From assembly GCA_044892505.1 (NCBI GenBank), contig CM097883.1, positions 406,100,001 to 406,164,000 of the forward strand: DNA of 64,000 nt, written 5' to 3'. This document shows positions 1,848 to 59,721 of the stretch, piece after piece. The notes below the pieces were generated by a model, which was not told where the DNA came from, made no database searches, and was given only the letters and a program-made list of their open reading frames with translations. A program made the position numbers and the translations under genes. Position 1 is the first letter of the stretch; every line of letters starts with the position of its first letter. Source of the DNA: Schmidtea nova. Its lineage: Eukaryota.

Positions 1848-2426
1848 TAAATTAGTTTACTAATATATTTAGTGTTTTGAATGCACATTTGCATGATACC
1901 TTTTGTATTTTTATTTTTTAATAATTTTCTCTTAATTCTACCATTTTTTGTTGAAATTGCAAAAATGTATGATGGAGTTACATGCATGGCATATAAAAAT
2001 ATTCAATACTTGAAAGGGTTAATAAGTATTTATACGTTAAATATAATAGAATCATTCGAAATATATTTTTTGCTAAAAAATATGCTATTGCTAAACTTTC
2101 CAGATAAACTTGAAATGGTTGATAAGGATGATTTTGAATTAAATACTTTTCTCTAATACTGTCAGAAAAATTAAGAACAAAAATTGTTTCATTAGAATAT
2201 GTTAACTTTTTTGAATAGTTTACTTTAATTTCATAATTAAATTTTAACAATTACTATAAATTATTAAACAATTCTTAAATAATAAATTAAATTAAAAAAT
2301 AACAATTAAAATCAAATTATGCATATTTATTTTATTATTTTATAATTTTATGTAAATTTATATTAAAATTTCTTCTTGTTTAAATATTCTATAATATTTG
2401 AACTACAACAGTTGCAATATTTCAAA

Positions 2427-5258: not shown

Positions 5259-5500
5259 GTTAAAACACTAAAAATCAATAAAAATGCAGCAATATCAAAC
5301 AGTTATTTCAGTGCACCTTGTTTCAGTCAGTAAAGGTTTCTATAATAAAAATTAGGCAACACACTAAGCAAATTATTCGCAATGACAATTATTATTATCA
5401 ATATTGAAGTTTTGTTTATTTGAATCAATTCGTTAAATTTCAATTGGTTAAGGAAGGTATGTAAATTATAGTTATTAATTTATTATCGATTCTAGATAAA

Positions 5501-6793
5501 ATGTATGAAAGTGTTTATAACATTATGAAAGAAAATAAATTTGAAACCGATAATGAAATCAGCAAGAAATTGAAATGCAATATTTGTCACGAATTGCTGA
5601 TAAAGGCTTGCAGTGCTCCTTGCGGTTGCCGGTTTTGTTCTGAGTGCATTGAGCATTATTTGGATGGGAATGATAAATTCTGTCCTGGATCATCAAAATA
5701 CTGTCAAATGAAAATAATAAATTTTGCAAATGATGTTGTAATAGACAACCATGCAAACATTGAAATAGCGGAAATCATTGTGAAATGTCCAAGAAAAAAT
5801 TGTGAATATAAAGACGAAATACAAGTAATTAAAAATCACATGAGAACATGTGATAAGCGAATCAGCTGCCCATTCAATCCAATTGGATGTGACATGAATA
5901 AAGTGTTATATGATGAAATGAAGTACCATCTCAATGAGGATAATTATTGCCATAGCAAATTGTTGGTTGATCTGATCAATAGTTTACACCATGAGATGGA
6001 ATCGATGAGAAATGAAATTATCGAATTGAAGAGAGAACTGAAAGTGCAATTAATAAATCAACAAGTAAATCAATTAATTAAAATATTCAACTGATATTTG
6101 TAATTGCAGCAGAACTTGGAGACAAATGTTGAATCAATCAATGAAGTTTAATTATTGATTTAATATTTTTTTATTTATGTGAAAATGTAAATCAGATAAA
6201 TCAACAAATTAGCATGATGGAAGCAAAATCTCAACAAGATTATGAACAGCAACAGGAAGAGAATAAAAAAGTGAAATTGATTTATTGAAATGTTTGAATT
6301 TGGGTTATAGTTTCAGGTCGAATAGGAGAAATTAGCCACTGAGATTCGGTTATTACACACAAAATTGGAAAGTGAAAATTTGGGATTTATAGAATGGAAA
6401 ATTGAGAAATTATTACAGCAAAAGAGTGGTACACAGATTTGCAGCAGGCCATTTTATTCAGGGCCATTCGAATACAAAATGTGTTTGAAGGTATTTATTT
6501 GGGACAATGAAATCAATGTTTATCTCCATTTGATGCGTGGAGAATTCGATGATGGAATGGTATGGCCATTCAAATACGCCGTGACAATTGTTTCAATCAA
6601 TCCAGCAAATGGAAATATTTATAACAGTCAAACACTAAAACATACTTATTGCCCTAATGACACCCGCTGGGGAAAGCCATCAAAAGGTAGAAATGATGCA
6701 ATTTGGTTCAATGGTGTTCGTGTGGCACTTGATTCACTAACAACCGAAAATGATCAGTTGGGTATCAATTGCAAAGTGGAACGCGATGATTGA
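5501..6793 (+). CDS. TRAF-like gene, copy 1 (RING, TRAF zinc fingers, coiled coil, MATH); predicted exons 5501-6064, 6110-6145, 6196-6270, 6326(or 6317)-6793
   Basis: RING and CPRKNC..H..C / CPFNPIGC..H..H fingers; MATH with SRPFY and GEFD..WPF; three GT-AG phase-0 introns of 45, 50 and 46/55 nt at positions homologous to copy 3. Confidence 0.88.
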
Positions 6794-9510: not shown

Positions 9511-12000
9511 TTAACACTAGAAGGACGGGAAAATTAAAATACTTAAAAGGACAAAGTGGACCGCAATGCTTTAACTGTCAGACCTTATTTAATTTTCTTT
9601 CTATGACTGCGTTAACAGAATAATAAAATAATAGAATACGCCATATTTGATGATGTGAATTTTGATTTATTCATTATTTAGTCTGTAGTGGTCTAAAGAT
9701 TGATTATTATCTGTGAAACGATTGTACCTTACGACATAATAAAAATACAAAACCAACAAACAATGACTGCTAATCTTCGGTTTCGGATGATTTCAGCGCA
9801 TCAAGTTTGATGGTCTCTCAAGAAAAACCCACGGAAATAAAACTCGAAATTTGAAAAACTATTTTAACGTATCACCGACACAATAAACAAAATTCTCCCA
9901 TTCTAAAGAGCAAAATATACATTGTAAACATTCACATAAATCTACAAAAAATAATTTGGATTCATATTCCATTTTATGTCAATGATAAAATTTATTTTTT
10001 GACAATAAAAATTTATATTACATTATGAAAATTATACAAATTGTAATGTTTCATTTTTGGGTTATATATTTTTCATTTTTTGTATCACGATTTGCTTTTA
10101 AACTTTTTTGCGCATTTGTTTTATTACTTTACTTTACATTTAATATACTAGATTTTGGTTTTGAAAAATACTTATTTGACAAACAGTGTTAATGTTTTAT
10201 AGAATTTCAATTTTATTTTTGATGTGTATGAGTTGCTCTATTTTGAAAATGCTTGGGGAGTTGGATGATGTTGGAGGTTCGGATCGAGGAAATATGAATC
10301 GTTATTCGTTGAAAAGGTATTCTGATATTGCCGATTTTGGTAATTATTGAGAATTTGAACCAATTTTTGACTGGCTCTCATATTGATTTTGAGGACTTAT
10401 TGGCTATCAAAGATGAAGAACCGACAGAAATCGAACAACAATTAGAAGAAAATGATGAAATTGAAGATAGGGATAATGCGAGTGATGATGGAATTCCTCA
10501 AAGTGATACTTTGGTTAGTAAATCTGGCGAAATAGTTTGGTCAACATCTGAAGAAACATCTCGAAAACTTCAAAGATTTCGGGTGCTGCAACTTATATTT
10601 ATAAAATATGCAACGCCGGAGACGAAGGTTTTTTAGGCAATCAACATAATAAATACAAATGAATCAGATAACTAGGAAGCAAGATATGCCTAAAATCTTA
10701 TGGGTCCTCTGAGGAAAATGAAAGCGAATCTATCAGCGATCTCAGAGAACCATCTGTTAACGAATTAAATTACAATATTGAATCTATCGTCATTCCTATA
10801 CCTCTAAGAAAACTAGTGGGGCTACCAGAAAAACAGTTTACTGGCATGTTTGGAACAAAGGCATTGTATGAATATATCTTACTGCTGTATCATTGAGCGT
10901 TCGTGCTCGAAATCATAACATTCTTCAAGTTAGGAGTGAGCCCACAGTAATTGCCTATAGGGAAATGAAAAAATATAATCTGCAGCAAGAACACTATGAC
11001 TCTTCATTGATGACCATATATTCTGCTAATTAAAGAAATTTACAGAAGTAGAAGTCAAGTGCGTTCTTGATAAGAAATGGACACTAACGTTGAACAAACT
11101 CGAAACGTTTAGTTGGCTATGTTATATAAGAGGCATTTTGGAGGGAAGAACTTTTTTTGATCTAGCAATTGGTGACCTAAAATATTTGGTGACACGATTT
11201 CGAGAGATAGATTCATGGTTATAATGAAATATAAACAATTCGACGTCAGACAAAATCGTAGTACAAGTTTCATGTCAAGCAAATTTTATTTGACTTTCGG
11301 TTTGCATAATCCCTTCTTTGAGAATTTCCAGGAAAAGCTAAGAACCCTTGGAAAATATAACTATTGACGAACAGCTTTTCTCAGAAAAAGCACGCCGTAA
11401 GTCTTTCCAACATATCAAAAACAAACCTGACAAATTCTGCATCGAGTCTTTGCAGCGGATTTCCTTATTTAAGTCGGAATTACGAGCATCTATTCAATCA
11501 GCCGCTGCCTGAATATGTGGTTCTACGTTTCATGGATGAATACTTGAACAAAGGATACAATGTCCTATGTGACAATTACCTCACAACCTCTTTCCTTACC
11601 AATCGTTTTCTTGAAAGATGAATAAATTTACCTGGAACTAAATACCTCAATCTATGCGAGTTGACTCAGATAAACGAACTAATAAAGAATTATCCTAAGT
11701 ATGACATTAAGCTTTTCGTATCTGATTCAGGTTGAACTCTCACATTGTACAAGTACAAGCCTCAACAAATTGTGATTTCTTTGATATTCCCGTTATTTCA
11801 GATTTCAAAGAGGTGTTCATAAAGGTCTGGGACAATGAGACGGCAATAAGAGGTATTTTTAATATTCTGGGTCTAGTACCCATCTATGCGTGTATGCTTG
11901 TATTGCACAAAATGGATAGCCATGTAGAATATATTTACTATTTTTAATACAGGATTTTTGTAGAGAAAATCATACGCGAAAATCTTAACCTGCTCCTTAA
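9511..12000 (+). mobile_element. Degenerate piggyBac-like (PGBD) transposon
   Basis: TTAA+CACTAGAAGG candidate left end at 9511-9524; acidic N-terminal ORF 10328-10636; ITIDEQLFSEKARRKSFQHIKNKPDKF from 11357; GYNVLCDNYLTT. Right end not found. Confidence 0.75.
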
Positions 12001-12049
12001 AACAGAAATGTGGAAATCGTCCATAAAGGGTGAAAGGAGTGGTTCTGGT

Positions 12050-15000
12050 AGACGGTGGCAGTGGCAATTCTCTGGATGATAAAACAAATCATCGACATCT
12101 TGTATGGATTGCAAGAAAGCTGTGTGGGCAGCTCACTGCTTAGAAAGGACAAAAAGCACAGGTAAAAAGCGCAGAAGAAATAAAGGGAACACAAATTCTT
12201 GTGGATAAAGTGGGGAAACAAACACATCAAATAAACGTTTTGAAAAGTTACTCAGGAGCGGTCCATCAGGAGCCACAGAGAGGGAGACAGTACAAGCAGG
12301 AAGAACAAAGAGAAGAAAGCGAGACGAAGAGAAGGACCAGAATGTTGCTTATGTTACAAAATGGGCCATACGAAAATAAACTTTGTTGGGCGTGACACAG
12401 AAACGGACATATAAGTAGGTATTGTCCAGGTATAAAAGAGCCAAGATGTTTTGGTGTGGGAAAGAAAGTCATATAAGAAGGTTATTTCAGGATGCAACAA
12501 AAATAGTAATAGATCCGAAGAATTTTAATCAAAACAAGGACCGAAAGTAAATAGATACAGTCGGATAAATGAAATCCAAGAAGAAGAAGAAAGGGAATCG
12601 TATGTAGAGACAAATGAAGATAAATTTAGTAAACCGTACCCAAATAACTGTGCTTCACCAGTAGAGGAGTTGGTTGGCGACATATACTAACAGAAGAATT
12701 GATTGGATAAGGTAAAGGTTTAAAGAGGAAGTGGAAAAAATCGGAACGATTGAAATGGGGCAGGCTGTAGAAATTGTGTATAACAAGCTACAAAGAAGAC
12801 CTAGTGTAACAGTAATGAATGGGGAAAATTTCGACTGTTTATTAGTTACCGGAGCACAAATCAATGTAATGATTGTGAACTGTTTTAATAAGTTACGAGG
12901 ACAACAATAAATGAGGAGCGATGATAAATTACGATGCGCAAATGAGAGTACGATAGAAACAATAGGAAGAATAAAGGTGCAAGTAACTATTGGAGATATT
13001 TCTTAGGAAGTTATATTCATTGTTGCGGAGAAAGTGACACCAGATTTGATTGGAGAAGTGGAATTATAAGAAGCATTTGGATATATGCTGTCGAAAAGGA
13101 AAGAAATCGAAGCTAGTGAAAAAGACAAGAACTATATTTATAACATTGAAGCGAAATTCGGCAGATAAATTAAGAACGAAGAACGGTTGACACGAGCCTT
13201 GGAACATCTAAAGATTAATGAAGATAGCAAACTAAAGGAAATAATAACGAACAGTGGGAACGTATTCATGGCGGATAAATGGGATGTGGTTCGCACGCAT
13301 TTAGTAAAACATAAGATAGTTACAAGAGGTAAACCTATTAATATAAAACCATATCGTCAACCATTAAATTTGGAAATAAAGATTGAAGAAGCAATACAAA
13401 ATTTGTACGAAAACGGGATTATAAGGAAATGCAACTCCCCGTGGAATACGCCGTTAATATGCGTATGAAAAAAAGATAAAAGGGATCTAAGGTTATGCTT
13501 GAAATTCAGACGGCTGAACGTGGTAACAGAAAGGCAGGTATTTTCAATGCCAAACATATACGAGATGTTGGATTTGTTATGAGGAGCCGTCTTTTTTAGC
13601 TAAATTGACCTAGGTAATACATATTACCAAGTTGAGTTAGACAAAGAATCACAGGAGAAAACAACCTTCTCAACAAAAAACGGGCAATACTGTTTAAATA
13701 GAATGCCGTTCGGAATTGCAGCAGCACCAGGTGCGTTTCAGGAAATGATGACAACGGTAATCGGCAATATAAATGGGGCTATGGTGTATTTGGATGACAA
13801 CTTGATTTATTCGAGCAGTAAAGAAAACATTATGCAATATTAGGGTAGGTGTTATAGGCGATCGAGGTAGCAGGACTAAAGATTAACCCAGAAAAGTGTC
13901 AAATAATACAGAAATAACCCGATTCCTAGGACATATAATCAGCAAAGAAGGAGCACAGACAAATTCTTCCAAGATTGAGGCCATACAAAATTCATGGAGT
14001 CAAGTTGCGAAAAGATACACTGAAGCTTTTTAAGCATTTGCAATTATTATGGAAGATTAATCAGCGAGTTTGCAAAGACGGCCAAGATGTTAGAACAATT
14101 ATGTAGCGGCCCTAGTAATAAAATTTTGGAGTGGACGGAAGTAACGAATAGCGTGTTTGAGAGATTGAAGGGAGCACTTACGATGGCTCCGAAATATATA
14201 TTGGGCATAATAAACCAGTAGTGTAAGTATCAAGTCTTGACAGCGATAACAATATAAGACGAAGAAACAATAAAAAAACGATAAAGAAAAATGGATTTTA
14301 AGATTTGGTTGCCCAAAGGTATAAAAGTTGATTGCGGGGAGACGTTTGAATCAGGAATGATAAGAGAATTCACAAAGAAGTTAAATATTAAGTTTTTTTT
14401 CTCGAGTCGATACCATTACCAAGCAAATGGGCAGATAGAAAAACAACTCAGGACAATTTGAGAACTGATAAATGCTACTTTACAGGTCAGAAAGAAGACT
14501 GATTGACCGGAGATATTCCTAGAAGTAGAATTCACATTAAATGCAACCAAACAAAAACCGACAGAAAAAGCCCGGCAGAAATAGTTTTTGGAAAAAGGAT
14601 TAGCAGGGAAAATGGTACGAGTCAGTCAAAAAACATGTAAAAAGAAGAACCAGAAGAACAAACAAAGAGGAAATTCAATATTGGAGAAGACATATTAGTA
14701 AAATTAGAAACACGCAATAAAAACCAAGACAGATATTAGAGGCCATACAAAGTGATCTAGAAAGTGAATGACAGACGATATATCTTAAGATACGAGAATG
14801 ATATAAAGATTGAAAGAAACATGGAAAACTTTAAAAATTTCTTAAGAAGGGGGATATGAGGGAAGCTTGAATATTCTAAAAATTTTTAAGTTATCGGTTA
14901 CAAAATATTGAAAATGTGAAATTGAAAATTTAGTAAATTTTAAATTGAAAAGTTAAAATTGAAAAAATATTTCGAATTTTAAAATTTTAAATAAAAAATG

Positions 15001-23288: not shown

Positions 23289-24370
23289 TTAATTTTTTAA
23301 GAATGATTCCTTAAAAGTTTCAGTAGTCACCCAGGCTTTTTTATTTGCTGTGCAGTGGACTGGCAATCTACTAAAATTTACACCTTTCATTGACCGTGGT
23401 TTTAGTGCTCGATTTACAAGTAAAGGTTTCAGCATTCGATCTCCTGAAGCGTTAGAACAAAATAAAAAGGTCACGCGATCCTTGGCTACTTTTAACCCAC
23501 TTGCAATTTTCTGGGATTTGGCTACGTATGTTCTGCTCGGCATTCTTTTCCAGAAAAGGCCTGTTTCATCTGCATTCCATACCTGATCCGGAGTGTAGCC
23601 AGGTTCTTCAATTATTTTAGCCAATATTTGGGGAAATGCTTTAGCTGCATCCTCATCTGCAGATGAAATTTCACCCCTAATTTTTATATTATGAAGCGCG
23701 TGCCTTTGCCGATAACCTGTCATCCAACCTGTACTTGCAGAAAATTCAAATTTTTTATCTTTCTGACCTGATGTTTGTGGTTCCATTTCTTTCATCTGCT
23801 TATAAATTCGTAATGCCATCTGCTTTATGCCATTTCCGTCAACAGTTATCCGTTTTAGTGAGCAATCCACCATCCATATTACAACAACCTTCTCCATTTT
23901 TTTACAGTGTCTCTTGTGTATGATGTTGTATGAGCACTCATATTTGTTCCAGCAATCACAGATTTTCTGATAGCTTCTTCATTTTTTATAGTTCTTATGG
24001 TTGATTCTTTTAAATTAAAATATTTCCCTACAGAAGTGGCACCTTCTCCAGTGGCTAGTCCATCCAATATTTTGATTTTAATTTCCAAAGAAATAGCTTT
24101 TCTATTCGTTTGTTTTTTAGCTGACATTATTAATTGTAATGAGGTTCTTATATAAAAATTTATTTGCATGTAATAAATGAATGGACTTAAAATTATAAAT
24201 TACCTTTAACTTTAATTGAATTTATATTTGAATTTTTTTTGCTAAAAATGAAATTTTTTGCATCGCGTTAAATCAAATCAAATCGCGTAAAAACAAAACG
24301 AAATTATTTTGTTGAATCGCGTTAATTCAAATTCGCGTAAAAAAAGTTCGCGTAAAAACAGAATTAGGTG
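23289..24370 (-). mobile_element. Truncated Tigger/pogo-family DNA transposon
   Basis: CENP-B/psq HTH (RKAISLEIKIKIL), second HTH, NADETGLFWK and KDRVTFLFCSNASG (DDE_1); frameshift near 23890; terminus TA|CACCTAATTC at 24361-24372; DDE domain truncated, other end not found. Confidence 0.88.
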
Positions 24371-30889: not shown

Positions 30890-33666
30890 TGTTCTCTTTA
30901 AAATTGAAATAAAATTTGACCTTAATATACAATTTTTGAAATAGTAAAACAAACTTGCAACTATATTAATATATAAAATTGACGCTATTAGTCAATCCAA
31001 CTGAATTAATTATAAATAAACAAAAGTAAATTCTTATCTTTCAATAAAGATTATAGATAAAAAAATTTATACACTACTGAAAAAAGCTGTTCTAAAAACT
31101 CGTTCCAAAAACTCGTGTACTATTTTTAGAAAAATTGATCTTTATTCATTATAAACAATATTAAAATTTCTGAAATAAAAACCAAAGTATCAAAAGGGAA
31201 AATAATATGTGTTGATGTAAAATAAAATAATTGAAATTCTGGTTTCCCAGTATAATTTGGATTCCGAAATATTTGCAAGTTTTTAGAAATATTTACAATT
31301 AAAATAGAATTTTTTAAACATTTAAAATATCTTAAAGTTAATATTTCTAGGAAAATAGTATAAGCAGGTATCGAGTGAAAAGTCACAGAATAACAGAATA
31401 ATATTAAGTCAATGGTTATTATCAGACAGCGTAATTATGAAAATACAAACTAGGAAAAAAAATTTCTCAAGCGTAATAGAAACTCATCAAACTGCATGAA
31501 ATAATAAAAATAATGTTGTTTGGTTTAAAGATAATATTTTGGAAGATTAAGAGTAATCACCGAAACTACTCCCAAGATGAAATGATTGATGTTTGAGCAA
31601 CTTGTATTAATGAAAGGTTAAAGAACCCTGTCCAGTTGTGGTTAACAATATAAAGAATTACAAATTACAAAGGACCTAAAAGCAACATCTTATTGATTTT
31701 GAGGAAAATTGAAAAGTTTTTATTTTCTCTTCTAAATAAACCTAATTTACAACTTTATAATTACCCTCAATATAACTTTATTAACGAATAATCAAAACTT
31801 TATTTTCGGTTGAGTTATTGAATAAATGAACGCCTGGGGCCAGTTTCAGTAATATCACTACTGAAATCTTTAGAAATCTCACAGTTTATTACTGTTTTAT
31901 GAGCTCGAATGAACCGTATCTTTCAAATAATGGCGACTTGCGCAAATATATAACTGAATAAGACAATCATATTTTAACTTTTTTAGAAATGAGATCCCGA
32001 ATAGTTTTCTACCTCTTTCCACTCACACCTCTGAAAAAATTGATTTTCAGATTTTTTTAATTAAATAATTAGTTTTGATTAACATTTTGTATGATCTCAA
32101 CATAAAGGGTAAAATATTGATGGCACATATGGATACCACCCTCGACTTAATTGCTCAAAATATTTTAAAAAATGAAATAATCTAAAATAAATATATTCCA
32201 GTAAGATTCTCTCAATTAAAATGTCCTTCATTAGTAATAATTTCTTAACCGATTTCAAAGTTTTACCACTTTTACCATAAATAGACATTTAATCTTTCAC
32301 TGACTAAACATCCGTTCATTAATCCAAGTGCAAACATTTATCTAAAGATTTATAGAAATATCCTGTTCAAAGTTTAAAGGTTCTCTCATACACCAAACAA
32401 GTCTTTACCGTCAATTTCAGTAAAATTTTGACTTTTTTAAACATGACAACACAAAATAATTTAACTATAAAAATTATTTTGTTAATTTGTTGTATTGGGC
32501 TACAATAACCAAGCAAAAGAAGTAACAATATAAAAAACAGAGAAAAACAGGATAAATAAATTGAAATAATTAAATTAAATTAAGACAAAAATAGTAATAA
32601 ACTAGCGAAACAGAAATTAAAAATAAATAATTTAAAGCGAAAAATACCGAAATTATAAGAAAACCCCCGTTAGTCAAAATTTTACTATTTTAATGTCTCC
32701 ATCCCGATAATTTCGTTAAGGGTTATGGAACCGTGTGTGGCGATGTTATCATCGGTTACCGTGAAGCTCAGGTCTTTTATTCGCCAGACGAATGGGAAGA
32801 TCAAGCCACGTATAGAAATCAAGCGACCACAAAAGTTTGGTGATTTAAAATTAACTAATACAATTAACCACTAATAATCCAGTAAGCACTATATAAAATT
32901 AATTTCTACCCTTTGAGCATGCACCTGTGAAAGCCACCTGAAATCACGTTGGTAATGTGCATCTCGGGCATATAATAAGTGGTAGATGAGCTACTGTATT
33001 AGAACTATTTCTTCTTACAATACTCGTAAGGGTTCTGTAGGCGATAGAAGCCATAAATCCACTCTCAAGCCCCTCAGGTCACTAATTTAAGGTAACCGGT
33101 TGATTCCACTAGGGCAATTCCACTAGACACAATTCCACTTGCGCAANNNNNNNNNNNNNNNNNNNNNNNNNNNNNNNNNNNNNNNNNNNNNNNNNNNNNN
33201 NNNNNNNNNNNNNNNNNNNNNNNNNNNNNNNNNNNNNNNNNNNNNNNNNNNNNNNNNNNNNNNNNNNNNNNNNNNNNNNNNNNNNNNNNNNNNNNNNNNN
33301 NNNNNNNNNNNNNNNNNNNNTGAATTTTGAATTTATAGTGAATTTTTCGTGTCAACAATTTCGCCCGCAGCTTCTTTTTATATGCCACTCAAACGATCTA
33401 TGCAACGAACTATTTGAAAAGTACGACAAAAAGAAAGTGATATTTATGAACCCTTTCCATTTGTTTTGAAGGGTTTAATCATACCAGAAAAATATAAATT
33501 CACTAAAAGGGCGATTTTTTTAATAAAGGATACAGGTGCAAATAATCCATGCATCAAACATCATATCATTGTATATGGAACAAACGAAAATATTTGAACT
33601 CTGAGTCACTGTGATGAAGATTTTATGGATGGAACTTTTAAATCTTGCCCAAATATATTTTCACAT

Positions 33667-35211
33667 CTATATATTATTCACGGGAGTTCCGATGCCATTA
33701 GTATACGCCCTTTTGTGTAATAAAACTAGTGAAAAATATACAAAAATGTTTAAATTATTAAATGAAATGTATCCATTAAATCCAAAAAAAATTCCACGTC
33801 GATTACGAAATGGAATGATCAAAACCTTGACGAACATTTTTAAAGGTGCTTTTGATGAACCGGAAACCACACCAAGGTATTCTGATTTTTGGCGTGGTTG
33901 CCGATTCATCAATTTTATATTTGTTCCCTCGCTTATCATTTTACATAAGCTTACAAATAAATCTAAATATACTTTTGTTTTCGAATGTCTGTAGTTGGTA
34001 TTCAGCTTACGGCAATTTGTTAACATATACTCAGTCAAGCCAAATAGCAGGGAAAGAAGAATTCCAGGCCGAACCAAAGATCGATCGAAATCATCGGGTA
34101 ATCCCCCAAGGAGGATCTCATAAGGAGGTGTTCCACTGCCGGCTTGCTTATTAGAAAGTACTTGTCCAATCACTCGTATCGTGTAGATATAATTGTCAGA
34201 AAATGTAATATTTATTTGATAACCAGTTTCTATATAAATCTTAATTGTATCACTTTTCTTTATTAATTGATTGAAAGAGACATTGAAAAATCTGTAAAAT
34301 TTAAGAATAAGATTGGAAGCATAACACCAAGTTTTGGAAATGTCTGTGAAAATATCAAACATGCAGTTTACCAAAACTTCATGAATAAAAATAAAAGGAG
34401 GTCTCAAAGATTGAATAACCATATAAAAATGATACACACATGGATTTGATAGTACAGTACATACTCTAAATACATTCACTTTCGGATCTTGATAGGATAT
34501 CCATTGACAATAAAATCGCAATTTTCTTGAGACGAATAAGTTCATCATATAATAGTTAGCGATAATTACACTTTCTTCCGTTTGATTGTATAGCATGATA
34601 AACCATTTTTCTATTACTAAACTTTCATCAGTATCTTTCCACCTTACCGGATAAAAATAATTGAAATTAGAATGATGAAATTCAGGAAACACTTCAAAGT
34701 CATACGATATAATATACAATTTATTGAATGACAAAATGCGTGGGAAATCAATTTTTGGATTCTGGACCAAAACTTCGTTTGTGAAGATATTGTATGCGCA
34801 TGGTGAGGAGCAATTTATTTGAGTACTTTTAAATAGTTCACTCGATCTTGGAATAATTAGATCTAAATGTTTTTTAAAATAAAATCCTTGCTCATTAAAG
34901 CTAACTAAGCAGCGGCATGTAATACTTGATTTTACCCATGACGTGCTTGCCTTCGAAAACCTTCCTCTGACATTAAAGTGATATGATATATAGTTTATTC
35001 TATCAATCAGAAAGTTTACGATTACGACGGAGTCTTTGAGAGCAACCCAATGTAGGAGCGACAGATCCGTACCTTCCGTAATGATTATTTTTACTTCTAT
35101 CGGATCTAGGGACTCTATTGATCTTTCGAATCTTGCGTCATCATCTGCGATAATATATGCGAACCGTAAACGTCGCTTTGCTGATTCTTCTATATATTCT
35201 TCATTCAACAT
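33667..35211 (-). CDS. Uncharacterised protein with an N-terminal ankyrin-like repeat (514 aa from ATG 35211)
   Basis: Uninterrupted ORF in very AT-rich DNA; GTDLSLLHWVALKDSVVIVNFLID fits the ankyrin consensus; the last ~60 codons are antisense MULE sequence. Confidence 0.7.
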   Translation of the reverse strand: MLNEEYIEESAKRRLRFAYIIADDDARFERSIESLDPIEVKIIITEGTDLSLLHWVALKDSVVIVNFLIDRINYISYHFNVRGRFSKASTSWVKSSITCRCLVSFNEQGFYFKKHLDLIIPRSSELFKSTQINCSSPCAYNIFTNEVLVQNPKIDFPRILSFNKLYIISYDFEVFPEFHHSNFNYFYPVRWKDTDESLVIEKWFIMLYNQTEESVIIANYYMMNLFVSRKLRFYCQWISYQDPKVNVFRVCTVLSNPCVYHFYMVIQSLRPPFIFIHEVLVNCMFDIFTDISKTWCYASNLILKFYRFFNVSFNQLIKKSDTIKIYIETGYQINITFSDNYIYTIRVIGQVLSNKQAGSGTPPYEILLGGLPDDFDRSLVRPGILLSLLFGLTEYMLTNCRKLNTNYRHSKTKVYLDLFVSLCKMISEGTNIKLMNRQPRQKSEYLGVVSGSSKAPLKMFVKVLIIPFRNRRGIFFGFNGYISFNNLNIFVYFSLVLLHKRAYTNGIGTPVNNI

Positions 35212-35506
35212 TTTATTCAAATGATATTTCGGTAATCTATATTTGATATTATAATATATTTTTAAATTAGAATTTTAAAAGTCGAATTTCAAACGCTTTC
35301 AAATCTTTATTTTATATTATCGTGCGGGTTAACCGCTTAACAACCTCTTTTTAACAAAACATACAATGTTGAAATTATAAAATTTTTACATATATAACAA
35401 TTTTTTACAACCTTAATTTACATAATTTTAAATATACATAAGACACGAATAAACATTTATTTATGTTTAAAATTCATATCCAAACGTGTGTCCAGAGAAC
35501 ATTACA
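33851..35506 (-). mobile_element. Unclassified 1656-bp insertion flanked by GTGCT direct repeats
   Basis: GTGCT at 33846-33850 and 35507-35511; removing the insert rejoins MULE as ..IFKGA|RVVCCFF..; minus-strand end starts TGTAATG. Confidence 0.72.
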
Positions 35507-36178
35507 GTGCTCGGGTAGTTTGCTGTTTTTTCATTTGCAAAAATCTATTTACCATCATTTGGGTGTTATTGGATCTAAAATTAAATGCAACACAAATGTC
35601 AATTTCGCGTTTGATGTCCGAATGATAATATCTCTTGCACTTGTTCCGATCCAACATCAAGAAAAATATTATGAAATCCTAACGAAAAACAACTTACTGA
35701 AGGATGATGATGATTTATTCAACTACTTTGAGAGTAATTACTTCGGTTTTCTTCGTCCTGATGGTGGTCGCAGAAAACCACGTTTTCATCGCGAGTTATG
35801 GATCTTCTATGAAGAAGCACGAAACAGTGGATATAAGACAAACAATATTGTAGAGGGTTTCAACAATGCGTTAAACCACTTAATAAATAATAGTGGTAAA
35901 TTGCGTTTAACCCAGCGCTAAATTTCTAGTATCACACTATAAGATACATTGATCCCTGATGTTTACAGACCAGCTTCCTTTGAGTGAATTGTTCAGTTCG
36001 ATGAGACTCATCACTTCAATCAATCTCGATTCGCACTCTGCTCCAACTAGATCATCCTAATTTGTACCATCCACGATTTTCTCGGTAAAACTACAAGCCA
36101 TTCTGAGCCACTTCGAGATCGGATAATGCCCAATAAGATTTCCACAAAAAAAAACAATTTACACCTAGTAACTTTACC

Positions 36179-37100
36179 TTAAATTGGGTTAACTATATTT
36201 CTTCTAGACCATAACAGGTTACCATGACGATTGCGTTCAATTTTAAGACCGAAAACTGTTGTATCGACTAATAGTTTCGCTGGCTTTGTTACTAATCCAT
36301 ACTGAGCCAAATATTTCACAACCTCATCAATACCGAGCACACTCGTGTTGACAGTTATGTCATCAATGTAGTGATTTTTCACATTCTAGATTCGCGTACA
36401 TCCACTTCGGCTACAAGATTCGTCATTATTAGGCAATTTAGCATAAAACTTATTCCTCAAACAGATAAATGATACTTCCTCTCGGCTTCACATTGGACTC
36501 TTCTACCATCTACTACAACAAGATCTCTGGTATCACCACTTCCATCTGCACAGATCCCAGAAACAATGGTTTGCGAACGTCCAGAATTGACCAGTCTAGT
36601 GCAAGACTTTCCATTCACAATGAGTCTCGCGCCATCACTGAGAAACCACTGGCGTTACAGTTTCTTTTCTGGCGCTTACCTAAGAGTTTGAAGAGCATTT
36701 TCTGGACGAATGCTTTTGATTTCACATGTACAACACTCTTGAGAGAGGCATCTATTTTAAAAATGTCCAGATTTTCAACATCCATAGCAGTTTGATTTAT
36801 TTACCGGCTCAAAACCACTTCTCTTCACTGCAATTTGGCCTTTAGAGCCGTTTTGTTCGATTATCAGTGCTCGAGCTTGTCGAACACCTTTTGAAAGGTT
36901 CATTTTGAAGATACTCACAGAAGCTCTAAGCTGGTGGGAGGCCATTGATGTAAGTCCGACTACAATTATCCTCTTGAGAAACCCGTAAACATTTATCCCA
37001 GTCAGCGTAGCCAATCGCTACAGGTGCGCAAGAAACTCATCAACTAGCTCTCCATTCGATTGCGAAACGTGTCACAAGCCTGCAAGCCATCCATCGAAAA
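36179..37100 (-). mobile_element. Degenerate Ty3/gypsy-type reverse transcriptase region
   Basis: HYIDD catalytic motif followed by VVKYLAQYGLVTKP..VFGLKI; surrounding frames broken by stops. Confidence 0.7.
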
Positions 37101-45850: not shown

Positions 45851-48064
45851 TTATGAAGGATTTTCAAGAAAGATGTTATTTTCTCGAGACTCTAGAGCTG
45901 CCACCACCAACTCGTATTTCCGTGAGGCTACCGTGTCACATCTACTGCTATATTTACCATTGATAAGTTCCTTTCGAATTTTACTTAGATTCACAATTTC
46001 ATCATCCGGAAAGAAGCAATTCTTGTTTGTCTGTCGGTTGGAGGCCGCCTCACTGATCGGGAGACCCCAAAAATCGAAAACCGGCTGCACGTTTTGGTCT
46101 ACTTCATTCGATATAGATTCCATCCATGCGTCAATCTTTTCTTGATTTGACTGAAAATCTGCGTTTTTGTGTTTTTGAAAAACATTTTTAATGATACCCC
46201 AATCGAAATTTATAACAATATGTGCAAAAATCATCGCCCCGAAATACGAATCACTTTTCCATGAATCATAGTTCGGATCTCTATCTAACATATAGGAGGC
46301 CATAAGACGAGTGTGGGGAGTAAAGATTCGACATCTATCATCTAAAATATCCCATTTCCAATGATAGTTGTAGTTGAAAAGAGCAAATAAGTTAGCTAAA
46401 GCGTCTTCTGAACCTTCAAAGATTAAAGATGTTGGAATGAAACCCAATGCTATTCTTCGCAAGAGTCTCCATGATCCATCAACTCTTATGAAGGTTTTAT
46501 TTATGAATTCATTCACGTAGGAATGTGTTAGAGATAACGGATATTCTGGCTCGCCATTATATATTGACGATTGTATATCCGTAACTATGCGAAACCGTTT
46601 GTGATTTTTGGCGAGTTCCCCGATCAATTGGTAGTTCAAATATATAATCTGATCCCAGTCATTAATGAGAATATCTTTAAGATAATCAAACGAATAGGGT
46701 CTGATAAAAGAGCTTTCCAAACAAAACGAGATATAACTTGTTTGCAATTCACCAAAAAGTCCCTTGGCAGTTTTCCTCTGTTTGTCCCATATTTCTGAAG
46801 TGATTTTGTCTTGTAAATTCAAAAATAACGTTTCAATCACATTCTCTAGCCGTATTACCAAATGGGTTTTAATTTCATAGCTCTTGAACCAGATAATTCC
46901 ACCGAAAGGAGAAAAAATTTCACCTGAGTCCTCATCGACGGTTTCGTTATTCACGGATACTTGCGGAAACCGATAGACTTCCTCATATCTTTTGTCTTTT
47001 CTAAAATTTATTTGTTGACATCCGATAACGAAATCCCAATTTCCTAACTTACTATATGTTGTATATTTTAATGTATCACCCGCTGCTAAAAAGTACCCGG
47101 AAGAATGAAATTCTTTTACTACATCAAGATCAAAAATCCTTAAGGTAACAGTTGTTCGGTCAATCTTTTCATCGTCCCGGTAATCTCCCGGGTAGACATT
47201 TACACAAGGCGCCTTATACCCACTATTAGCCATATACTTATAGATAATAAAGCGGTTTAAAGAAAATATTAATTCTTCCTTGTCTTTTTTCAGAGGAAAT
47301 TCTTTTATTGGGCAAGAGAATTCGGCTGGAGCGCTGTATTTTTCCGCAACAAGTCTGAGTTCAGTGGACATAGATTTCTTGTCTAACATGTAGGGTTTGA
47401 AGCTGCTTATAAGAGACTTTAACTTGTCGAATTTCAGGAGGAATTCATTATAGTTTTTAGCCATTCTTTTAATATAATTCGTAATACCGGGGTACGAGTT
47501 TAAGTTAGCCTTTGTTGGTAGCATATAGAAACCACTGGAATATTCTGGCACTTCGAAGTCAAAATCCAAGCGAAGGGCTTGCAGCATGAACATAACATAA
47601 CGCCACATCGTTTGCATTTCATCGTGGCTAGGTAACTCTAGCACCAAGGAAAACTTTCCAGCAGCTAAGTCATTTAGGATCTTTTTTTCACGTTTCTTGT
47701 CAATCAGTAATTGGGGGTAGAAGTAAATAATAGTACCAGGCGGAGGATCACTTCCGTATAACTGATTCATAACCAATGCGTCAACCCCATTTGGTGAAAG
47801 CCATTGAAAAATTGCAGATTTCATCTGCGCATTGTCTGGTTGGTGAATAGATTTCAAAAATATGTCATTTTTTCCGAACACCATCACTCTTCCTTTGCCG
47901 TATGTGCAGGCAACTGCGCAGAGAAAGATCGCATTAGGGATTTTAAGGATTTCTTCACAGTTGCTTTCAGAGTAGATTAATCTTGCAAGTTCCGGAGGGA
48001 AATTAAATCCAATTCCGGGTTTCCACATCTGATCATAAACGGTCTGAAAATAAAAATTCATCAT
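45851..48064 (-). CDS. TCAF/FAM115-like protein with an M60-like (enhancin-family) domain lacking HExxH
   Basis: 737-codon ORF. Ordered TCAF-like motifs: YGKGRVMVF, SSGYFL, IGC, PFGGII, FGEL, RIVTDIQ, EYP, ANLF, FDW, W...S..V.QN..P.F..WG.PI. May begin at a splice acceptor (48044-48045) instead of ATG 48064. Confidence 0.85.
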   Translation of the reverse strand: MMNFYFQTVYDQMWKPGIGFNFPPELARLIYSESNCEEILKIPNAIFLCAVACTYGKGRVMVFGKNDIFLKSIHQPDNAQMKSAIFQWLSPNGVDALVMNQLYGSDPPPGTIIYFYPQLLIDKKREKKILNDLAAGKFSLVLELPSHDEMQTMWRYVMFMLQALRLDFDFEVPEYSSGFYMLPTKANLNSYPGITNYIKRMAKNYNEFLLKFDKLKSLISSFKPYMLDKKSMSTELRLVAEKYSAPAEFSCPIKEFPLKKDKEELIFSLNRFIIYKYMANSGYKAPCVNVYPGDYRDDEKIDRTTVTLRIFDLDVVKEFHSSGYFLAAGDTLKYTTYSKLGNWDFVIGCQQINFRKDKRYEEVYRFPQVSVNNETVDEDSGEIFSPFGGIIWFKSYEIKTHLVIRLENVIETLFLNLQDKITSEIWDKQRKTAKGLFGELQTSYISFCLESSFIRPYSFDYLKDILINDWDQIIYLNYQLIGELAKNHKRFRIVTDIQSSIYNGEPEYPLSLTHSYVNEFINKTFIRVDGSWRLLRRIALGFIPTSLIFEGSEDALANLFALFNYNYHWKWDILDDRCRIFTPHTRLMASYMLDRDPNYDSWKSDSYFGAMIFAHIVINFDWGIIKNVFQKHKNADFQSNQEKIDAWMESISNEVDQNVQPVFDFWGLPISEAASNRQTNKNCFFPDDEIVNLSKIRKELINGKYSSRCDTVASRKYELVVAALESRENNIFLENPS

Positions 48065-49914: not shown

Positions 49915-52900
49915 GCTTTCGTCATTGTCCGAAAGATCCGATTCAATTATGGGTTCCTTGTAAGGTTTTTCATTTAGCAAGGACCCTCGACCTTCGACTT
50001 CGCAAAGAATAAAATAGTCATTATTGTTTTTGACGGCCTCAATTTTAATGAATTGAGTTTTGACAGGATCAGTTAAGTATATTTCAATAGACGGTCCAAA
50101 TACTCGAATGCTGCTCTTAACATTTGAAAACATCTCTAAATCTTTATCTTTCGTTTGCAACTTAAATTTATCTCCAAAAGAAATAGTAACTTGATAACTG
50201 GTTCCGTCTAGAATGTATACAATATTCAAGGTCTTGATAAAAAATATTTCCCCTTACATTCGTATCGGTCGACACTATTCCAAATCCTCAAAGAACTGAT
50301 GCTGTATCTCTCTATCAAATCAATCACTACCATTTGAGATCCCTTGGCATCAGAGGCATAACATGATTGCCAAACGTGTTCCGTGTCCAAGGTGCCATCA
50401 TTAATGAACTCCCTATGCCAGTCATTTGACAGTAATACGGGCTTCTTTAATATTATGTTCATGGCTTAATGGGATTTATTTTACTATGCTATAGTGACTA
50501 TAGTGGTTTTTATTTTATTGCCTTGACTAACTACTCCACTATAGTATAGTGGAGTAGTTAGTCAAGGCAATAAAATAAAAACCAGTCAATATATCGCTTG
50601 CAAAATGCAATGTCGAAAATTCGTGTTAAATATAAAGCAAAATATTGATCTGTGATAATTTCCATTCTAAACAAATCAATTATGACAATAATTAGGAAAG
50701 GGAAATGGGGTTGCCAAATGAATGTTAGTCCACAAGATTTGGAATTCTCAATAAGCCATTTTATAAAAACCCGATAAAAACGAAAAAATCTTTACTCAAA
50801 AATGTGATATTAAATAAGTAAATTTATCTAAAATGTTTAGGCAGTCTAAACGTCTAAGTATAACCGTAAAAAATCAGCCTACCCTTGAAACTATCCCAAT
50901 ATCACCTGCAAGCCGATTACTTCAGGAGGAAATATGCATTAAAAATAAAGTTTCTGAACTTTTTTTACGATGAAAAATAAACTTGGAATTCCTGGAAAAC
51001 TTTGAACATTACCGAAGAAAAAAGAATTCTTGGAACAATTTGAGTTTGCTTTTTACATTCCTGTAACATCCATCCATATGGGAGGGCTAAAAATTAATTA
51101 TCATTAAAATATTTGAGTTTTTATAACCATTGATCATTTTTCATTTTCAATTTCCCTTAGACACCTGGAAAAAATAAACCTATCCACCCAAAAAAATACA
51201 AGTTTTTAACAGTTTTTTGGAAATGCATTAGCTTGACAGTATATTTATTCGGTGTATGAGAGTGAATGTATGCCTGGAATGTATAATTCATGTATGCACG
51301 TGTATGCATGTGTCCGTGTGTGGCTGCGTTCCTGGTGCTCACTAGATTAGCTGAAACCCAATGAGATTGCATTAGTAATTTTATTGGACGAGGCGATTGA
51401 CTGTTTAATTTTATCACATGTAGACAGGATGTTTCCACTATTGTATCCATGTAAAACTGCGGTCAGCAGGGTATCTGGTAATTCTACTGGAACACATGCT
51501 TATAATCTTTCATCAACATACTGGTTGAACATTCCAACAAGATAATGGAGAGTTCCATAAATTTAGAAAGTAAATTCAGTTGTTCACCGTCAATGACTAT
51601 ATAGTTATAATATGACCCTCCAAGAGTCTTGACCTCAGCCCCATAGAAAACATCTTGTCTGCTCATAAATATCAATTGGATTTTACTATGGTTCCGGGAT
51701 TTGAGTAATTATGGGAACAAAGAGACATGATTTGCGACAACATGGATGTAAACTTTATCCGTAATTATATTCATTCATGCTAAATAACTGTACCACGGTT
51801 ATTAAAGAATAGATGAAGACAAACACATTATTAATTGTTTATTTTTACTCACTAATGTAAAAGTTGTTTTACTATAACATATTCTGAGACTCTAGTCCAT
51901 TTGATATTTACTGACTAGTNNNNNNNNNNNNNNNNNNNNNNNNNNNNNNNNNNNNNNNNNNNNNNNNNNNNNNNNNNNNNNNNNNNNNNNNNNNNNNNNN
52001 NNNNNNNNNNNNNNNNNNNNNNNNNNNNNNNNNNNNNNNNNNNNNNNNNNNNNNNNNNNNNNNNNNNNNACATTTTCAGTGGTTATACCGTTAATTTTTC
52101 GATAGTATATTTTCATTTCTTTTCAAATTATATATCAATATTATTTTTACCTTTGACACGAATTTGGGCTTTGCTTTCTACAAAATTTAATTGAAATGTG
52201 TGTTANNNNNNNNNNNNNNNNNNNNNNNNNNNNNNNNNNNNNNNNNNNNNNNNNNNNNNNNNNNNNNNNNNNNNNNNNNNNNNNNNNNNNNNNNNNNNNN
52301 NNNNNNNNNNNNNNNNNNNNNNNNNNNNNNNNNNNNNNNNNNNNNNNNNNNAAAATTAAAAATTGCTACCCTTCTACAAAAATCTTGTTTAAATGAAATA
52401 TTACCATATCTGTCAATCATGATCACTCCAAAACAAATTTCTTTCCAATTGACTAATCACTTTTACTTGTTTTCTTTTTTTTCAATGAATCTAATAATAA
52501 ATTTATTTATCAAATTTATTTATCAAATTTATTTATCAAATTTATTTATCAAATTTATTTATCAAATTTATTTATCAAATTTATTTATCAAATTTATTTA
52601 TCAAATTTATTTATCAAATTTATTTATCAATCTAAGGATCGAAAATTTTCTCAATCAAACTTTGCAGCAAAGATTTATTTTATTATTTATTAATTGTTCA
52701 ATAAATAAAAATAAAAATAAAGAAGGAGGAGGCCTAGAAGAAGAATGATAATAAGAATAAGAATTACCTGAAGGAATGGCGTTACACAATTCCTCATAAA
52801 TCGGATCTTCGGCCGGGGTTCGATCCACCACATTTGCTTCAATTTCAAATTCACAAATTTTCAGGTAAGTCTTTACATCATATTGTTTCAGTCGAATAAT

Positions 52901-53436: not shown

Positions 53437-53807
53437 TTCAGAAATTAATTTGAAATTAATTATATTCTGAATTATATTTCTGAATTATATTCTTGAAGGG
53501 TTTGCAGATTTTTACACGAACTCGAACATGTTCAGTGATCCAGAAACCCATCACGCTTGACATCATCTGGAACCGTTACCAACTGAAAGAATGTGCATTA
53601 GAAATTGAATTGAGCATTCATTTCCATATTATTAGTAATTAATGAAATATAATTAATNNNNNNNNNNNNNNNNNNNNNNNNNNNNNNNNNNNNNNNNNNN
53701 NNNNNNNNNNNNNNNNNNNNNNNNNNNNNNNNNNNNNNNNNNNNNNNNNNNNNNNNNNNNNNNNNNNNNNNNNNNNNNNNNNNNNNNNNNNNNNNNNNNN
53801 NNNNNNN

Positions 53808-54024
53808 CCCATAATGGTAAGACTATAGATCAAAATTTCTTTAAATAAGTACACTATATTTCGGCACAGTCTTTATTAAGTGTGTATTCCACACTTGTAA
53901 TACATACTTGATAAAGGCTGTGCCGTAATATTGTGTACTTATTTAAAGAAATTTTGATCTATAGTCTTACCATTATGGGAATTATTGATATAATTATTAA
54001 AAAAAGATCAAAGGTGAAACAAAA
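53808..54024. repeat. Second copy of the hairpin-containing repeat (palindrome 53808-53979)
   Basis: cccataatggtaagactatagatc...gatctatagtcttaccattatggg; flanked by N gaps on both sides. Confidence 0.88.
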
Positions 54025-59691: not shown

Positions 59692-59721
59692 TTAAAAATA
59701 GAATAAAATATTTTAGGTAAA

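What the first reader, a model, noticed from the sequence alone, without database searches (positions are those of the whole stretch)
33851..35506. Cargo-only insertion: 1.66-kb unit with 5-bp target duplication carrying an unknown ankyrin-repeat gene
Deleting 33851-35511 rejoins the MULE transposase at the expected motif (..IFKGA|RVVCCFFH, allowing a 1-nt slip), and GTGCT flanks both sides, so the segment inserted after the MULE. It has ~295 bp of AT-rich leader starting TGTAATG, then a stop-free ORF of about 453 codons within the insert. That ORF has one ankyrin-like repeat followed by an aromatic-rich region with no transposase, RT or integrase motif I can recognise. A 5-bp TSD and TG start are typical of DDE integrases of LTR or Ginger type, but the far end (TTTGATG on +) is at best a degenerate inverted copy and there are no LTR pairs. 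An intact ORF inside a decayed host element implies recent arrival or selection. This is my best candidate for an undescribed non-autonomous element or gene-mobilising system; ankyrin cargo might modulate host signalling (speculation).
Basis: partly seen in the sequence, partly recalled or inferred. Interest (0 to 1): 0.8.

Follow-up and report, generated by a model that had tools for sequence, protein, structure and literature searches.

The report
Hairpin-ended orphan-gene insert in dead transposon
A 1,656-base piece of foreign DNA carrying most of an otherwise unknown gene really did land, with a clean 5-base duplication, inside a dead "Mutator-like" jumping gene, but nothing yet shows that this piece is itself a new kind of jumping gene.

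Summary
The structural observation holds. A related, uninterrupted copy of the host element (metagenome contig L002, 87% DNA identity) is continuous exactly where the window carries 33851-35506. It has the 5-base site once where the window has GTGCT twice. The insertion is therefore precise, has a 5-bp target-site duplication, and post-dates the FLYWCH-MULE.

- **ORF:** the minus-strand ORF is clearly coding: no stops in 453 codons, against 30 in each other frame. It has no stop inside the insert and runs 61 more codons into antisense MULE.
- **Homology:** only its first 74 residues have a relative anywhere, the N-terminus of an ankyrin-repeat protein at 40% identity. Pfam calls no ankyrin repeat in it, and the remaining 379 residues are orphan.
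- **Ends:** there is no significant terminal inverted repeat, no LTR and no poly(A).
- **Copy number:** no second copy was found, but this genome seems absent from the searchable collections, so copy number and mobility are untested.

My best reading is a trans-mobilised, asymmetric unit, most likely copied through RNA. A one-off repair capture of a gene fragment remains a serious rival.

The parts
33103..33146 (+). Subterminal 14-nt tandem repeats of the host MULE, directly followed by the masked N-run 33147-33320 (not filled)
   Evidence: TRF row 33103-33139. Matches L002 7-66. N-run listed.
33350..35897 (+). Broken FLYWCH-MULE transposase gene (one part, first to last homologous base), interrupted by the insert. 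Compared with the intact 474-aa L002 protein it covers residues 101-272 (left piece) and 278-401 (right piece). Breaks: one 1,656-bp insertion; 5 frameshifting indels and 2 in-frame stops in the left piece; 1-3 frameshifting indels and no stops in the right piece; both gene ends missing or masked.
   Evidence: L002 ORF carries FLYWCH (PF04500, E = 1.6e-14) and MULE (PF10551, E = 1.2e-9) domains. tblastn and blastn of the pieces run separately. Break counts.
33846..33850 (.). Left copy of the 5-bp target-site duplication, GTGCT
33851..35506 (-). The inserted 1,656-bp unit. Its gene is on the minus strand.
   Evidence: Absent from L002 and L003 at the homologous point. No other copy in the window.
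33852..33912 (-). Terminal hairpin at the unit's ORF-3' end: 24-nt arms 33852-33875 and 33889-33912 with a 13-nt loop. It encodes the last 21 codons of the in-insert ORF.
   Evidence: Arms 88% complementary. RNA fold of the minus strand is -34.2 kcal/mol, z = -8.8, with 0 of 200 shuffles as good; plus strand -28.6 kcal/mol, z = -5.4. Only 3 non-trivial hairpins of this quality occur in 64 kb. The arm sequence occurs nowhere else in the window.
33853..35211 (-). The 453 codons of the ORF that lie inside the insert. They are open to the last base of the insert, with no stop.
   Evidence: Stops in frames 1/2/3 are 0/41/35 over the whole ORF. Codon-usage log-odds are positive only in frame 1, as for the window's known genes.
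34990..35211 (-). Residues 1-74, the only part with a relative. It matches the N-terminus and first degenerate repeat of an ankyrin-repeat protein.
   Evidence: P0001 hit at E = 1.4e-10, 40% identity. P0001 has weak, sub-threshold Ank matches, and the next exon on its contig L001 has strong Ank hits.
33667..33852 (-). Run-on of the ORF into the flank: the last two insert bases complete a codon, then 61 codons through antisense MULE and the stop. The ORF as it stands is 514 codons.
   Evidence: A stop-free run of 61 codons is not remarkable here: 5.5% of all such windows have none.
35212..35506 (-). AT-rich leader of 295 nt upstream of the ATG, starting TGTAATG at the insert's right boundary. 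It has 7 ATGs and no significant structure.
35507..35511 (.). Right copy of the 5-bp target-site duplication, GTGCT

Best explanation
**Shown.** A 1,656-bp unit was inserted into an already existing FLYWCH-MULE transposase gene at a break with a 5-base stagger, whose fill-in gave the GTGCT duplication. The unit is asymmetric. One end is an AT-rich leader starting TG. The other is a strong stem-loop ending one base from the boundary. Between them lies a coding ORF that is open to the very end.

**Inferred.** The unit did not move itself, since no enzyme motif is present. It was mobilised in trans.

**Mechanism.** Because the ends are unlike each other, and the 3' end on the gene's sense strand is a stem-loop that folds better as sense RNA, the sub-mechanism I think most likely is target-primed reverse transcription. 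A LINE-type enzyme would start at a 3' stem-loop tail. The template would be either a non-autonomous retroposon or a chimeric copy made by a template switch from a stem-loop tail onto an mRNA. A template switch would explain why the ORF has lost its own stop.

**Present state.** The gene as it stands is a 514-codon chimera that finishes in antisense MULE. Its product is an orphan protein with an ankyrin-family N-terminus and unknown activity.
For: - Precise insertion and exact 5-bp TSD against an uninterrupted relative, which rules out misassembly.
- Terminal hairpin one base from the boundary: z = -8.8 on the sense strand against -5.4 on the other. Two of the three arm mismatches are G-U pairs on the sense strand. 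Such hairpins are rare in the window.
- No significant terminal inverted repeat, no LTR or direct terminal repeat.
- No enzyme domain in either strand of the insert.
- The ORF is real coding sequence with host-like codon use, and its N-terminus belongs to a eukaryotic, intron-bearing ankyrin gene family.
- RT-bearing elements exist in this genome: RVT_1 at 13604-13840.
- Recognition of a 3' stem-loop by stringent-type LINE proteins is established (PMC4176376). Chimeric retrocopies made by template jumps are established (PMC2104539).
Against: - No second copy and no partner element with the same tail were found.
- No poly(A) or short-repeat tail follows the stem-loop.
- The 295-nt leader has 7 ATGs and 21% GC. 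It looks more like promoter or intergenic DNA than a 5' UTR, which an mRNA copy would not carry.
- An exact 5-bp TSD is the signature of several DDE enzymes (PMC10045372, PMC1131882), whereas TPRT duplications vary in length.
- The G-U argument rests on two substitutions only.
Confidence: 0.35

Rival explanations
1. One-off capture of a gene fragment during break repair or replicative template switching, with no mobile element involved. A piece of an ordinary host gene (promoter, first 430-450 codons, perhaps the start of an intron) was copied or ligated into a break in the MULE. The 5-bp repeat comes from fill-in of a staggered break, or from return to the original template through 5 bp of microhomology. 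The hairpin marks where copying stalled or the fragment ended.
For: - The ORF has no stop of its own and ends at the boundary.
- The leader looks like promoter DNA.
- No inverted or direct terminal repeats.
- No second copy was seen anywhere.
- A GT lies 22 nt before the end, in a donor-like context (weak).
Against: - End-joining insertions usually delete target bases rather than duplicate them. Here nothing is lost and exactly 5 bp are doubled.
- Templated insertions usually copy nearby sequence, yet no donor lies within about 30 kb on either side.
- The hairpin arms are imperfect (21 of 24), so it is not a fresh snap-back product.
Confidence: 0.25
2. Non-autonomous DNA transposon, or an internally deleted derivative of a larger unknown one. 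It would be integrated by a DDE enzyme that makes 5-bp staggered cuts, of Ginger2/TDD, LTR-integrase-like or Transib type. The ORF would be the 5' part of the element's own or captured gene, fused by deletion to a short 3' end.
For: - Exact 5-bp TSD. Reported TSDs are 4-5 bp for Ginger2 and 3-6 bp for LTR elements (PMC10045372), and 5 bp with GC-rich targets in AT-rich genomes for Transib (PMC1131882). The target here is 3/5 GC in a genome of about 30% GC.
- The unit starts TGTAA on the gene strand.
- Deletion derivatives typically carry truncated ORFs (general knowledge).
Against: - The two ends are not significantly inverted copies of each other (p about 0.08).
- The other end reads ...AAA, not ...ACA or ...CA, and those bases are fixed by stem pairing.
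- Neither end starts with CAC, as Transib ends do (the Transib CAC start is from my own knowledge).
- No rve or Transib-like ORF was detected in the window.
- No other copy was found.
Confidence: 0.2
3. Solo LTR or other fragment of a known retroelement or virus.
For: 5-bp TSD and a TG start.
Against: - A 453-codon coding ORF fills 82% of the unit.
- No CA end.
- No similarity to anything in the window or to any protein, phage, plasmid or IMG/VR sequence.
Confidence: 0.04

Closest known systems
Nested transposable-element insertion into a decayed MULE (host element: FLYWCH-MULE, Mutator superfamily)
   Same: One element interrupted by a later insertion, with an intact TSD and an empty site visible in a sister copy. 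The host carries FLYWCH and PF10551 domains in its intact relative.
   Different: The inserted piece cannot be assigned to any TE superfamily and has no known TE protein.
Stringent-type LINE/SINE partners and chimeric retrocopies made by RT template jumps (PMC4176376, PMC2104539)
   Same: Asymmetric unit. A stable stem-loop sits exactly at the 3' end of the sense strand. There is no terminal repeat, a short TSD, and a gene body cut off and fused to the tail.
   Different: No short-repeat or A tail, no partner LINE with this tail identified, and a promoter-like leader rich in ATGs.
Ginger2/TDD, LTR-integrase-type and Transib insertions (PMC10045372, PMC1131882)
   Same: 5-bp duplication, a relatively GC-rich target, and a TGT start at one end.
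   Different: No TIRs or LTRs. The second end is not ...ACA or ...CA. No CAC heptamer. No cognate enzyme seen.
Pack-MULE-type gene-fragment capture
   Same: A host gene fragment lies inside a MULE.
   Different: Here the fragment interrupts the transposase gene at one point and is flanked by a 5-bp duplication of MULE sequence, so it arrived as an insertion. Pack-MULE capture replaces internal sequence and leaves no such duplication (the description of Pack-MULEs is from general knowledge).
Helitron 3' hairpin
   Same: A hairpin at one end only, next to the 3' terminus.
   Different: Helitrons make no TSD, insert between A and T, and end TC...CTRR (general knowledge). None of these holds here.

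Membership tests
MULE / Mutator superfamily (host element) | Transposase with the PF10551 MULE domain | tested here: met
   The window pieces alone are too short for Pfam. They are 68-81% identical in protein to L002, whose intact ORF hits PF10551 (E = 1.2e-9) and FLYWCH (E = 1.6e-14).
MULE / Mutator superfamily (host element) | Long TIRs and 8-10-bp TSD of the MULE itself | not tested
   The 5' region is partly masked by the N-run at 33147-33320, and the 3' part is missing after 35897.
Ankyrin-repeat proteins (the ORF) | Ankyrin repeats recognised by the Ank profiles | tested here: not met
   No Pfam family at E up to 10 for residues 1-74 or 75-453. Only pairwise homology of residues 1-74 to P0001. 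P0001 itself has weak, sub-threshold Ank matches, and the next exon on its contig has strong Ank hits.
LTR retrotransposon / solo LTR | 5'-TG...CA-3' ends with a 3-6-bp TSD | tested here: not met
   The TSD length fits (5 bp). The gene-strand 5' end is TG, but the 3' end reads ...AAA.
LTR retrotransposon / solo LTR | A paired LTR or a full element with the same LTR | tested here: inconclusive
   None in the 64-kb window. The rest of the genome is not available.
Ginger2/TDD | TIRs with TGT...ACA termini, 4-5-bp TSD | tested here: not met
   The TSD fits. One end reads TGTAA. The other end fails, and terminal inverted similarity is not significant (p about 0.08).
Transib | 5-bp TSD and TIRs beginning CAC (RSS-like heptamer) | tested here: not met
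   The TSD fits. The termini read TTTGATG and TGTAATG, not CAC....
Helitron | No TSD, insertion between A and T, TC...CTRR ends, 3' subterminal hairpin | tested here: not met
   A hairpin is present, but a 5-bp TSD exists and the termini differ.
LINE-dependent retroposon / retrocopy | 3' tail shared with a partner LINE, or poly(A); a TSD; 5' end at a transcript start | tested here: inconclusive
   The TSD and a 3' stem-loop are present. There is no A or repeat tail. No LINE with this tail occurs in the window. The transcript start is unknown.
Multi-copy mobile element (any class) | Two or more copies with the same termini at different sites | not testable with these tools
   No copy was found in any collection searched. 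However, 12 ORF products of this window are absent from the protein collection, so the genome itself seems not to be held.

The most novel reading that the evidence does not exclude
The unit represents an undescribed family of gene-carrying mobile DNA with unlike ends. One end would be defined by a long stem-loop, with no TIR, LTR or poly(A). It would integrate with a fixed 5-bp duplication and spread a lineage-specific orphan protein that has an ankyrin-type N-terminus.
Probability: 0.12. Interest if true: 0.75.

Novelty: new member of a known kind. Interest (0 to 1): 0.42.

Why it matters
As it stands, this is a well-documented nested insertion with a clean empty-site control, a truncated orphan gene and an unusual hairpin end. 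It is a good marker locus and a candidate for a chimeric gene built from inserted DNA plus antisense transposon sequence.

It would matter more if further copies exist. An element that has neither inverted nor long terminal repeats, ends in a stem-loop and always makes 5-bp duplications would not fit current TE classes.

If instead a single parent gene is found, the locus becomes a clear natural example of gene-fragment capture with a pseudo-TSD. That would be a useful caution for TE annotation.

Tried and rejected
**ORF searches, all blank**
- Pfam, NCBIfam and PHROGs family scans, and the PDB sequence search.
- Word-index protein search.
- The full HMMER search gave a single hit, covering residues 1-74 only.
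- tblastn against phages and plasmids.
- JGI metagenome and IMG/VR scans with the ORF.

**Structure prediction**
- Two AlphaFold runs were unusable: the whole in-insert ORF (pLDDT 32) and residues 1-120 with P0001 (pLDDT 36). No fold search was made.

**Other properties of the ORF**
- No internal repeats.
- Not a multi-pass membrane protein by hydropathy.
- No similarity of ORF residues 75-453 to the downstream ankyrin exon of L001.
- Plus-strand ORFs of the insert have no family.

**Identifying the organism**
- Exact look-ups of 12 window proteins and a word search with the M60 ORF found nothing.
- No tRNA or Rfam family in the window.
- From the domains present (TRAF/MATH, FLYWCH) and the soil or moss metagenome relatives, it is probably a small AT-rich animal, but this is not established.

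**Other copies**
- The right-hand MULE piece found no proteins of 76-243 aa in the word index.
- The hairpin arm is absent from GTDB genomes and IMG/VR.

**Ideas rejected**
- Misassembly: the TSD and the empty site speak against it.
- Bacterial, phage or plasmid origin: no hits, and the one relative has a spliceosomal intron.
- A hairpin-ended virus terminus or a CRESS-type origin: no viral protein and no hit.

- Treating the insert as an intron of the MULE was not tried. Picking a stretch to bridge an insertion is barred.
- The MULE was not rejoined across the insert, for the same reason.

Full report
**1. What is in the sequence**

- The window is about 30% GC, with eight N-runs that I left untouched.
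- GTGCT occurs at 33846-33850 and again at 35507-35511. The 1,656 bp between them (33851-35506) carry a minus-strand ORF starting with ATG at 35211.
- On that strand the segment begins TGTAATG. It then has a 295-nt leader with 21% GC and seven ATGs.
- After the leader come 453 codons that stay open to the last base of the segment. The frame runs on for 61 codons through the flank to a stop at 33667, giving 514 codons in all.
- A stop-free run of 61 codons is not unusual here: 5.5% of all such windows have none.

**2. Is it an insertion?**

The flanks translate to MULE-like pieces that are too short for Pfam. A scan of JGI metagenome contigs with the right-hand piece returned L002, which holds an intact 474-aa ORF. 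That ORF has a FLYWCH zinc finger (E = 1.6e-14) and a PF10551 MULE domain (E = 1.2e-9).

I compared the two window pieces with L002 separately and built no rejoined sequence.

| Window | L002 | Identity |
|---|---|---|
| 33350-33849 | 514-1027 | 87% |
| 35514-35897 | 1031-1415 | 87% |

- The flanks abut in L002. The three-sequence alignment A1 shows one pentamer in L002 where the window has GTGCT on both sides.
- The bases immediately outside the repeat differ, so the duplication is exactly 5 bp.
- A more distant MULE (L003) is also continuous across the site.
- Insertion, rather than deletion in the relatives, is therefore the economical reading. Misassembly is excluded by the duplication.
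- The insert lies inside the catalytic MULE domain, between L002 residues 272 and 278.

**3. State of the host gene**

Relative to L002, the window's transposase gene (33350-35897) has the following breaks:
- One large insertion.
- Five frameshifting indels and two in-frame stops in the left piece.
- One to three frameshifting indels and no stop in the right piece.
- Both ends missing. About the first 100 codons are absent or hidden by the N-run, and the last 73 or so are absent.

**4. The ORF**

It is coding.
- There is no stop in frame across residues 75-453, against 30 in each of the other two frames.
- Codon-usage log-odds are positive only in frame 1. The value is 0.10, against 0.14-0.25 for the window's domain-bearing ORFs and for L002.

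It has no family.
- Pfam, NCBIfam, PHROGs and the PDB sequence search gave nothing.
- The word-index search gave nothing.
- The exhaustive HMMER search of 1.84 billion representatives gave one hit. This was P0001 (130 aa), matching residues 2-74 at 40% identity with E = 1.4e-10.

P0001 lies on L001, a 1,130-bp metagenome contig with 29% GC. Its sequence continues after a GT..AG intron of about 45 nt into exons with strong ankyrin hits (E = 3e-19).

- The ORF shares that N-terminus and one degenerate repeat, and nothing after residue 74.
- "Ankyrin-repeat gene" is therefore only true of its ancestry at the N-terminus. The other 379 residues are orphan.
- They have no internal repeats and no series of membrane spans.
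- Two structure predictions were too poor to use, with pLDDT 32 and 36.

**5. The ends**

- The two termini are not a significant inverted repeat. The anchored alignment score has p of about 0.08 against random window pairs.
- There are no direct terminal repeats of note.
- There is no A tail.

Positions 33852-33875 and 33889-33912 form a 24-bp stem with a 13-nt loop, beginning one base inside the boundary.
- Folded as RNA on the gene's sense strand, it gives -34.2 kcal/mol (z = -8.8).
- On the other strand it gives -28.6 kcal/mol (z = -5.4).
- The difference arises because two of the three arm mismatches become G-U pairs on the sense strand.
- Only three non-trivial hairpins of this quality exist in the 64 kb, so its position at the boundary is not chance.
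- It encodes the ORF's last 21 in-insert codons.
- The opposite end has no significant structure.

**6. Copies elsewhere**

- None in the window, whether DNA, protein or hairpin arm.
- None in JGI metagenomes or IMG/VR with the ORF.
- None in GTDB genomes or IMG/VR with the hairpin pattern.
- None in phages or plasmids.

This absence is weak evidence. Twelve ORF products of the window are not in the protein collection, and even the M60 peptidase ORF finds no word-level relative. The genome is evidently not held. A sister MULE copy does occur in a soil metagenome (L002) while the insert's ORF does not. That hints, no more, that the insert is not high-copy.

**7. How it most likely works**

*Shown:* a precise, post-MULE insertion at a 5-base staggered break, of an asymmetric, hairpin-ended unit with no enzyme of its own.

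*Inferred:* mobilisation in trans. I rank the mechanisms as follows.

| Rank | Mechanism | Confidence |
|---|---|---|
| a | RNA-mediated copy primed at the 3' stem-loop | 0.35 |
| b | One-off repair or template-switch capture of a host gene fragment | 0.25 |
| c | Non-autonomous or deleted DDE transposon of a 5-bp-TSD family | 0.20 |
| d | Solo LTR or other known retroelement fragment | 0.04 |

(a) This would be a non-autonomous retroposon, or a chimeric retrocopy formed by a template jump from a stem-loop tail onto an mRNA.
- For: the unlike ends, the sense-strand stem-loop and the lost stop codon all fit.
- Known basis: stringent-type LINE proteins recognise 3' stem-loops (PMC4176376), and chimeric retrocopies made by template jumps are documented (PMC2104539).
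- Against: the promoter-like leader and the lack of any tail or partner element.

(b) This fits the truncated ORF and the absence of repeats.
- Against: the loss-free exact duplication, and the absence of a donor within 30 kb.

(c) The TSD length, the TG start and the relatively GC-rich target fit Ginger2, LTR integrases and Transib (PMC10045372, PMC1131882).
- Against: the second end and the missing TIRs.

The window also holds mariner, Tc1, pogo and RT remnants but no integrase ORF.

**8. Verdict**

- The claim of a new gene-mobilising system is not supported by any second copy, and it cannot be tested with the collections at hand.
- The decisive evidence is a census of copies, termini and a possible parent gene in the organism's own assembly.
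- I file the finding as an unclassified insertion, a new member of a known kind. There is a modest chance (about 0.12) that it stands for an undescribed hairpin-ended element family.

- N-runs were not filled.
- The insert was not excised in silico, and the MULE was not rejoined or repaired.
- Break positions are not listed.
- The spliced model of the L001 relative was examined exon by exon, and the joined step was left out.
- No contig looked human.

Noticed in passing
window 50506-50582: A perfect palindrome with arms of about 37 bp and a loop of about 5 nt, in otherwise unannotated sequence. It may be a foldback or MITE-like element. It has no sequence relation to the hairpin of the insert.
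   Followed up: partly
window 53808-53975: A long foldback with arms of about 75 bp that directly abuts the masked run 53658-53807.
   Followed up: no
window 13604-13840 (+), within an A-rich block at about 12000-15000: A decayed reverse-transcriptase fragment (RVT_1, E = 1.6e-13). It shows that RT-bearing elements exist in this genome. No hairpin like that of the insert was seen near it.
   Followed up: partly
window 950-1585 (+), 23292-23978 (-): Mariner (Transposase_1) and pogo/Tc5 (DDE_1, HTH_Tnp_Tc5) remnants. A Tc1-type DDE_3/HTH_SB ORF is also somewhere in the window. The region is rich in transposable elements.
   Followed up: no
window 5465-6790, 59707-62451, 2367-3716: Paralogous TRAF-like genes (RING, zf-TRAF and MATH exons) and a double-RING protein.
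   Followed up: no
window 45851-48064 (-): An intact 737-codon ORF with a Peptidase_M60 (enhancin-like) domain. It found no word-level relative in the 5.8-billion-cluster collection.
   Followed up: partly
window 35898-37020: The MULE homology stops abruptly at 35897. It is followed by a GC-richer block (40% GC) with several short broken minus-strand ORFs and no Pfam family. This may be another insertion or the cause of the MULE's 3' truncation.
   Followed up: partly
window 33147-33320: A masked N-run sits where the 5' part of the MULE (its FLYWCH region) would be expected. It was left unfilled, so the true state of that part is unknown.
   Followed up: no
L001 724-766: The only relative of the ORF has a short GT..AG intron of about 45 nt between ankyrin exons, on a contig with 29% GC. 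It therefore comes from a eukaryote with compact introns, probably related to the window's organism.
   Followed up: partly
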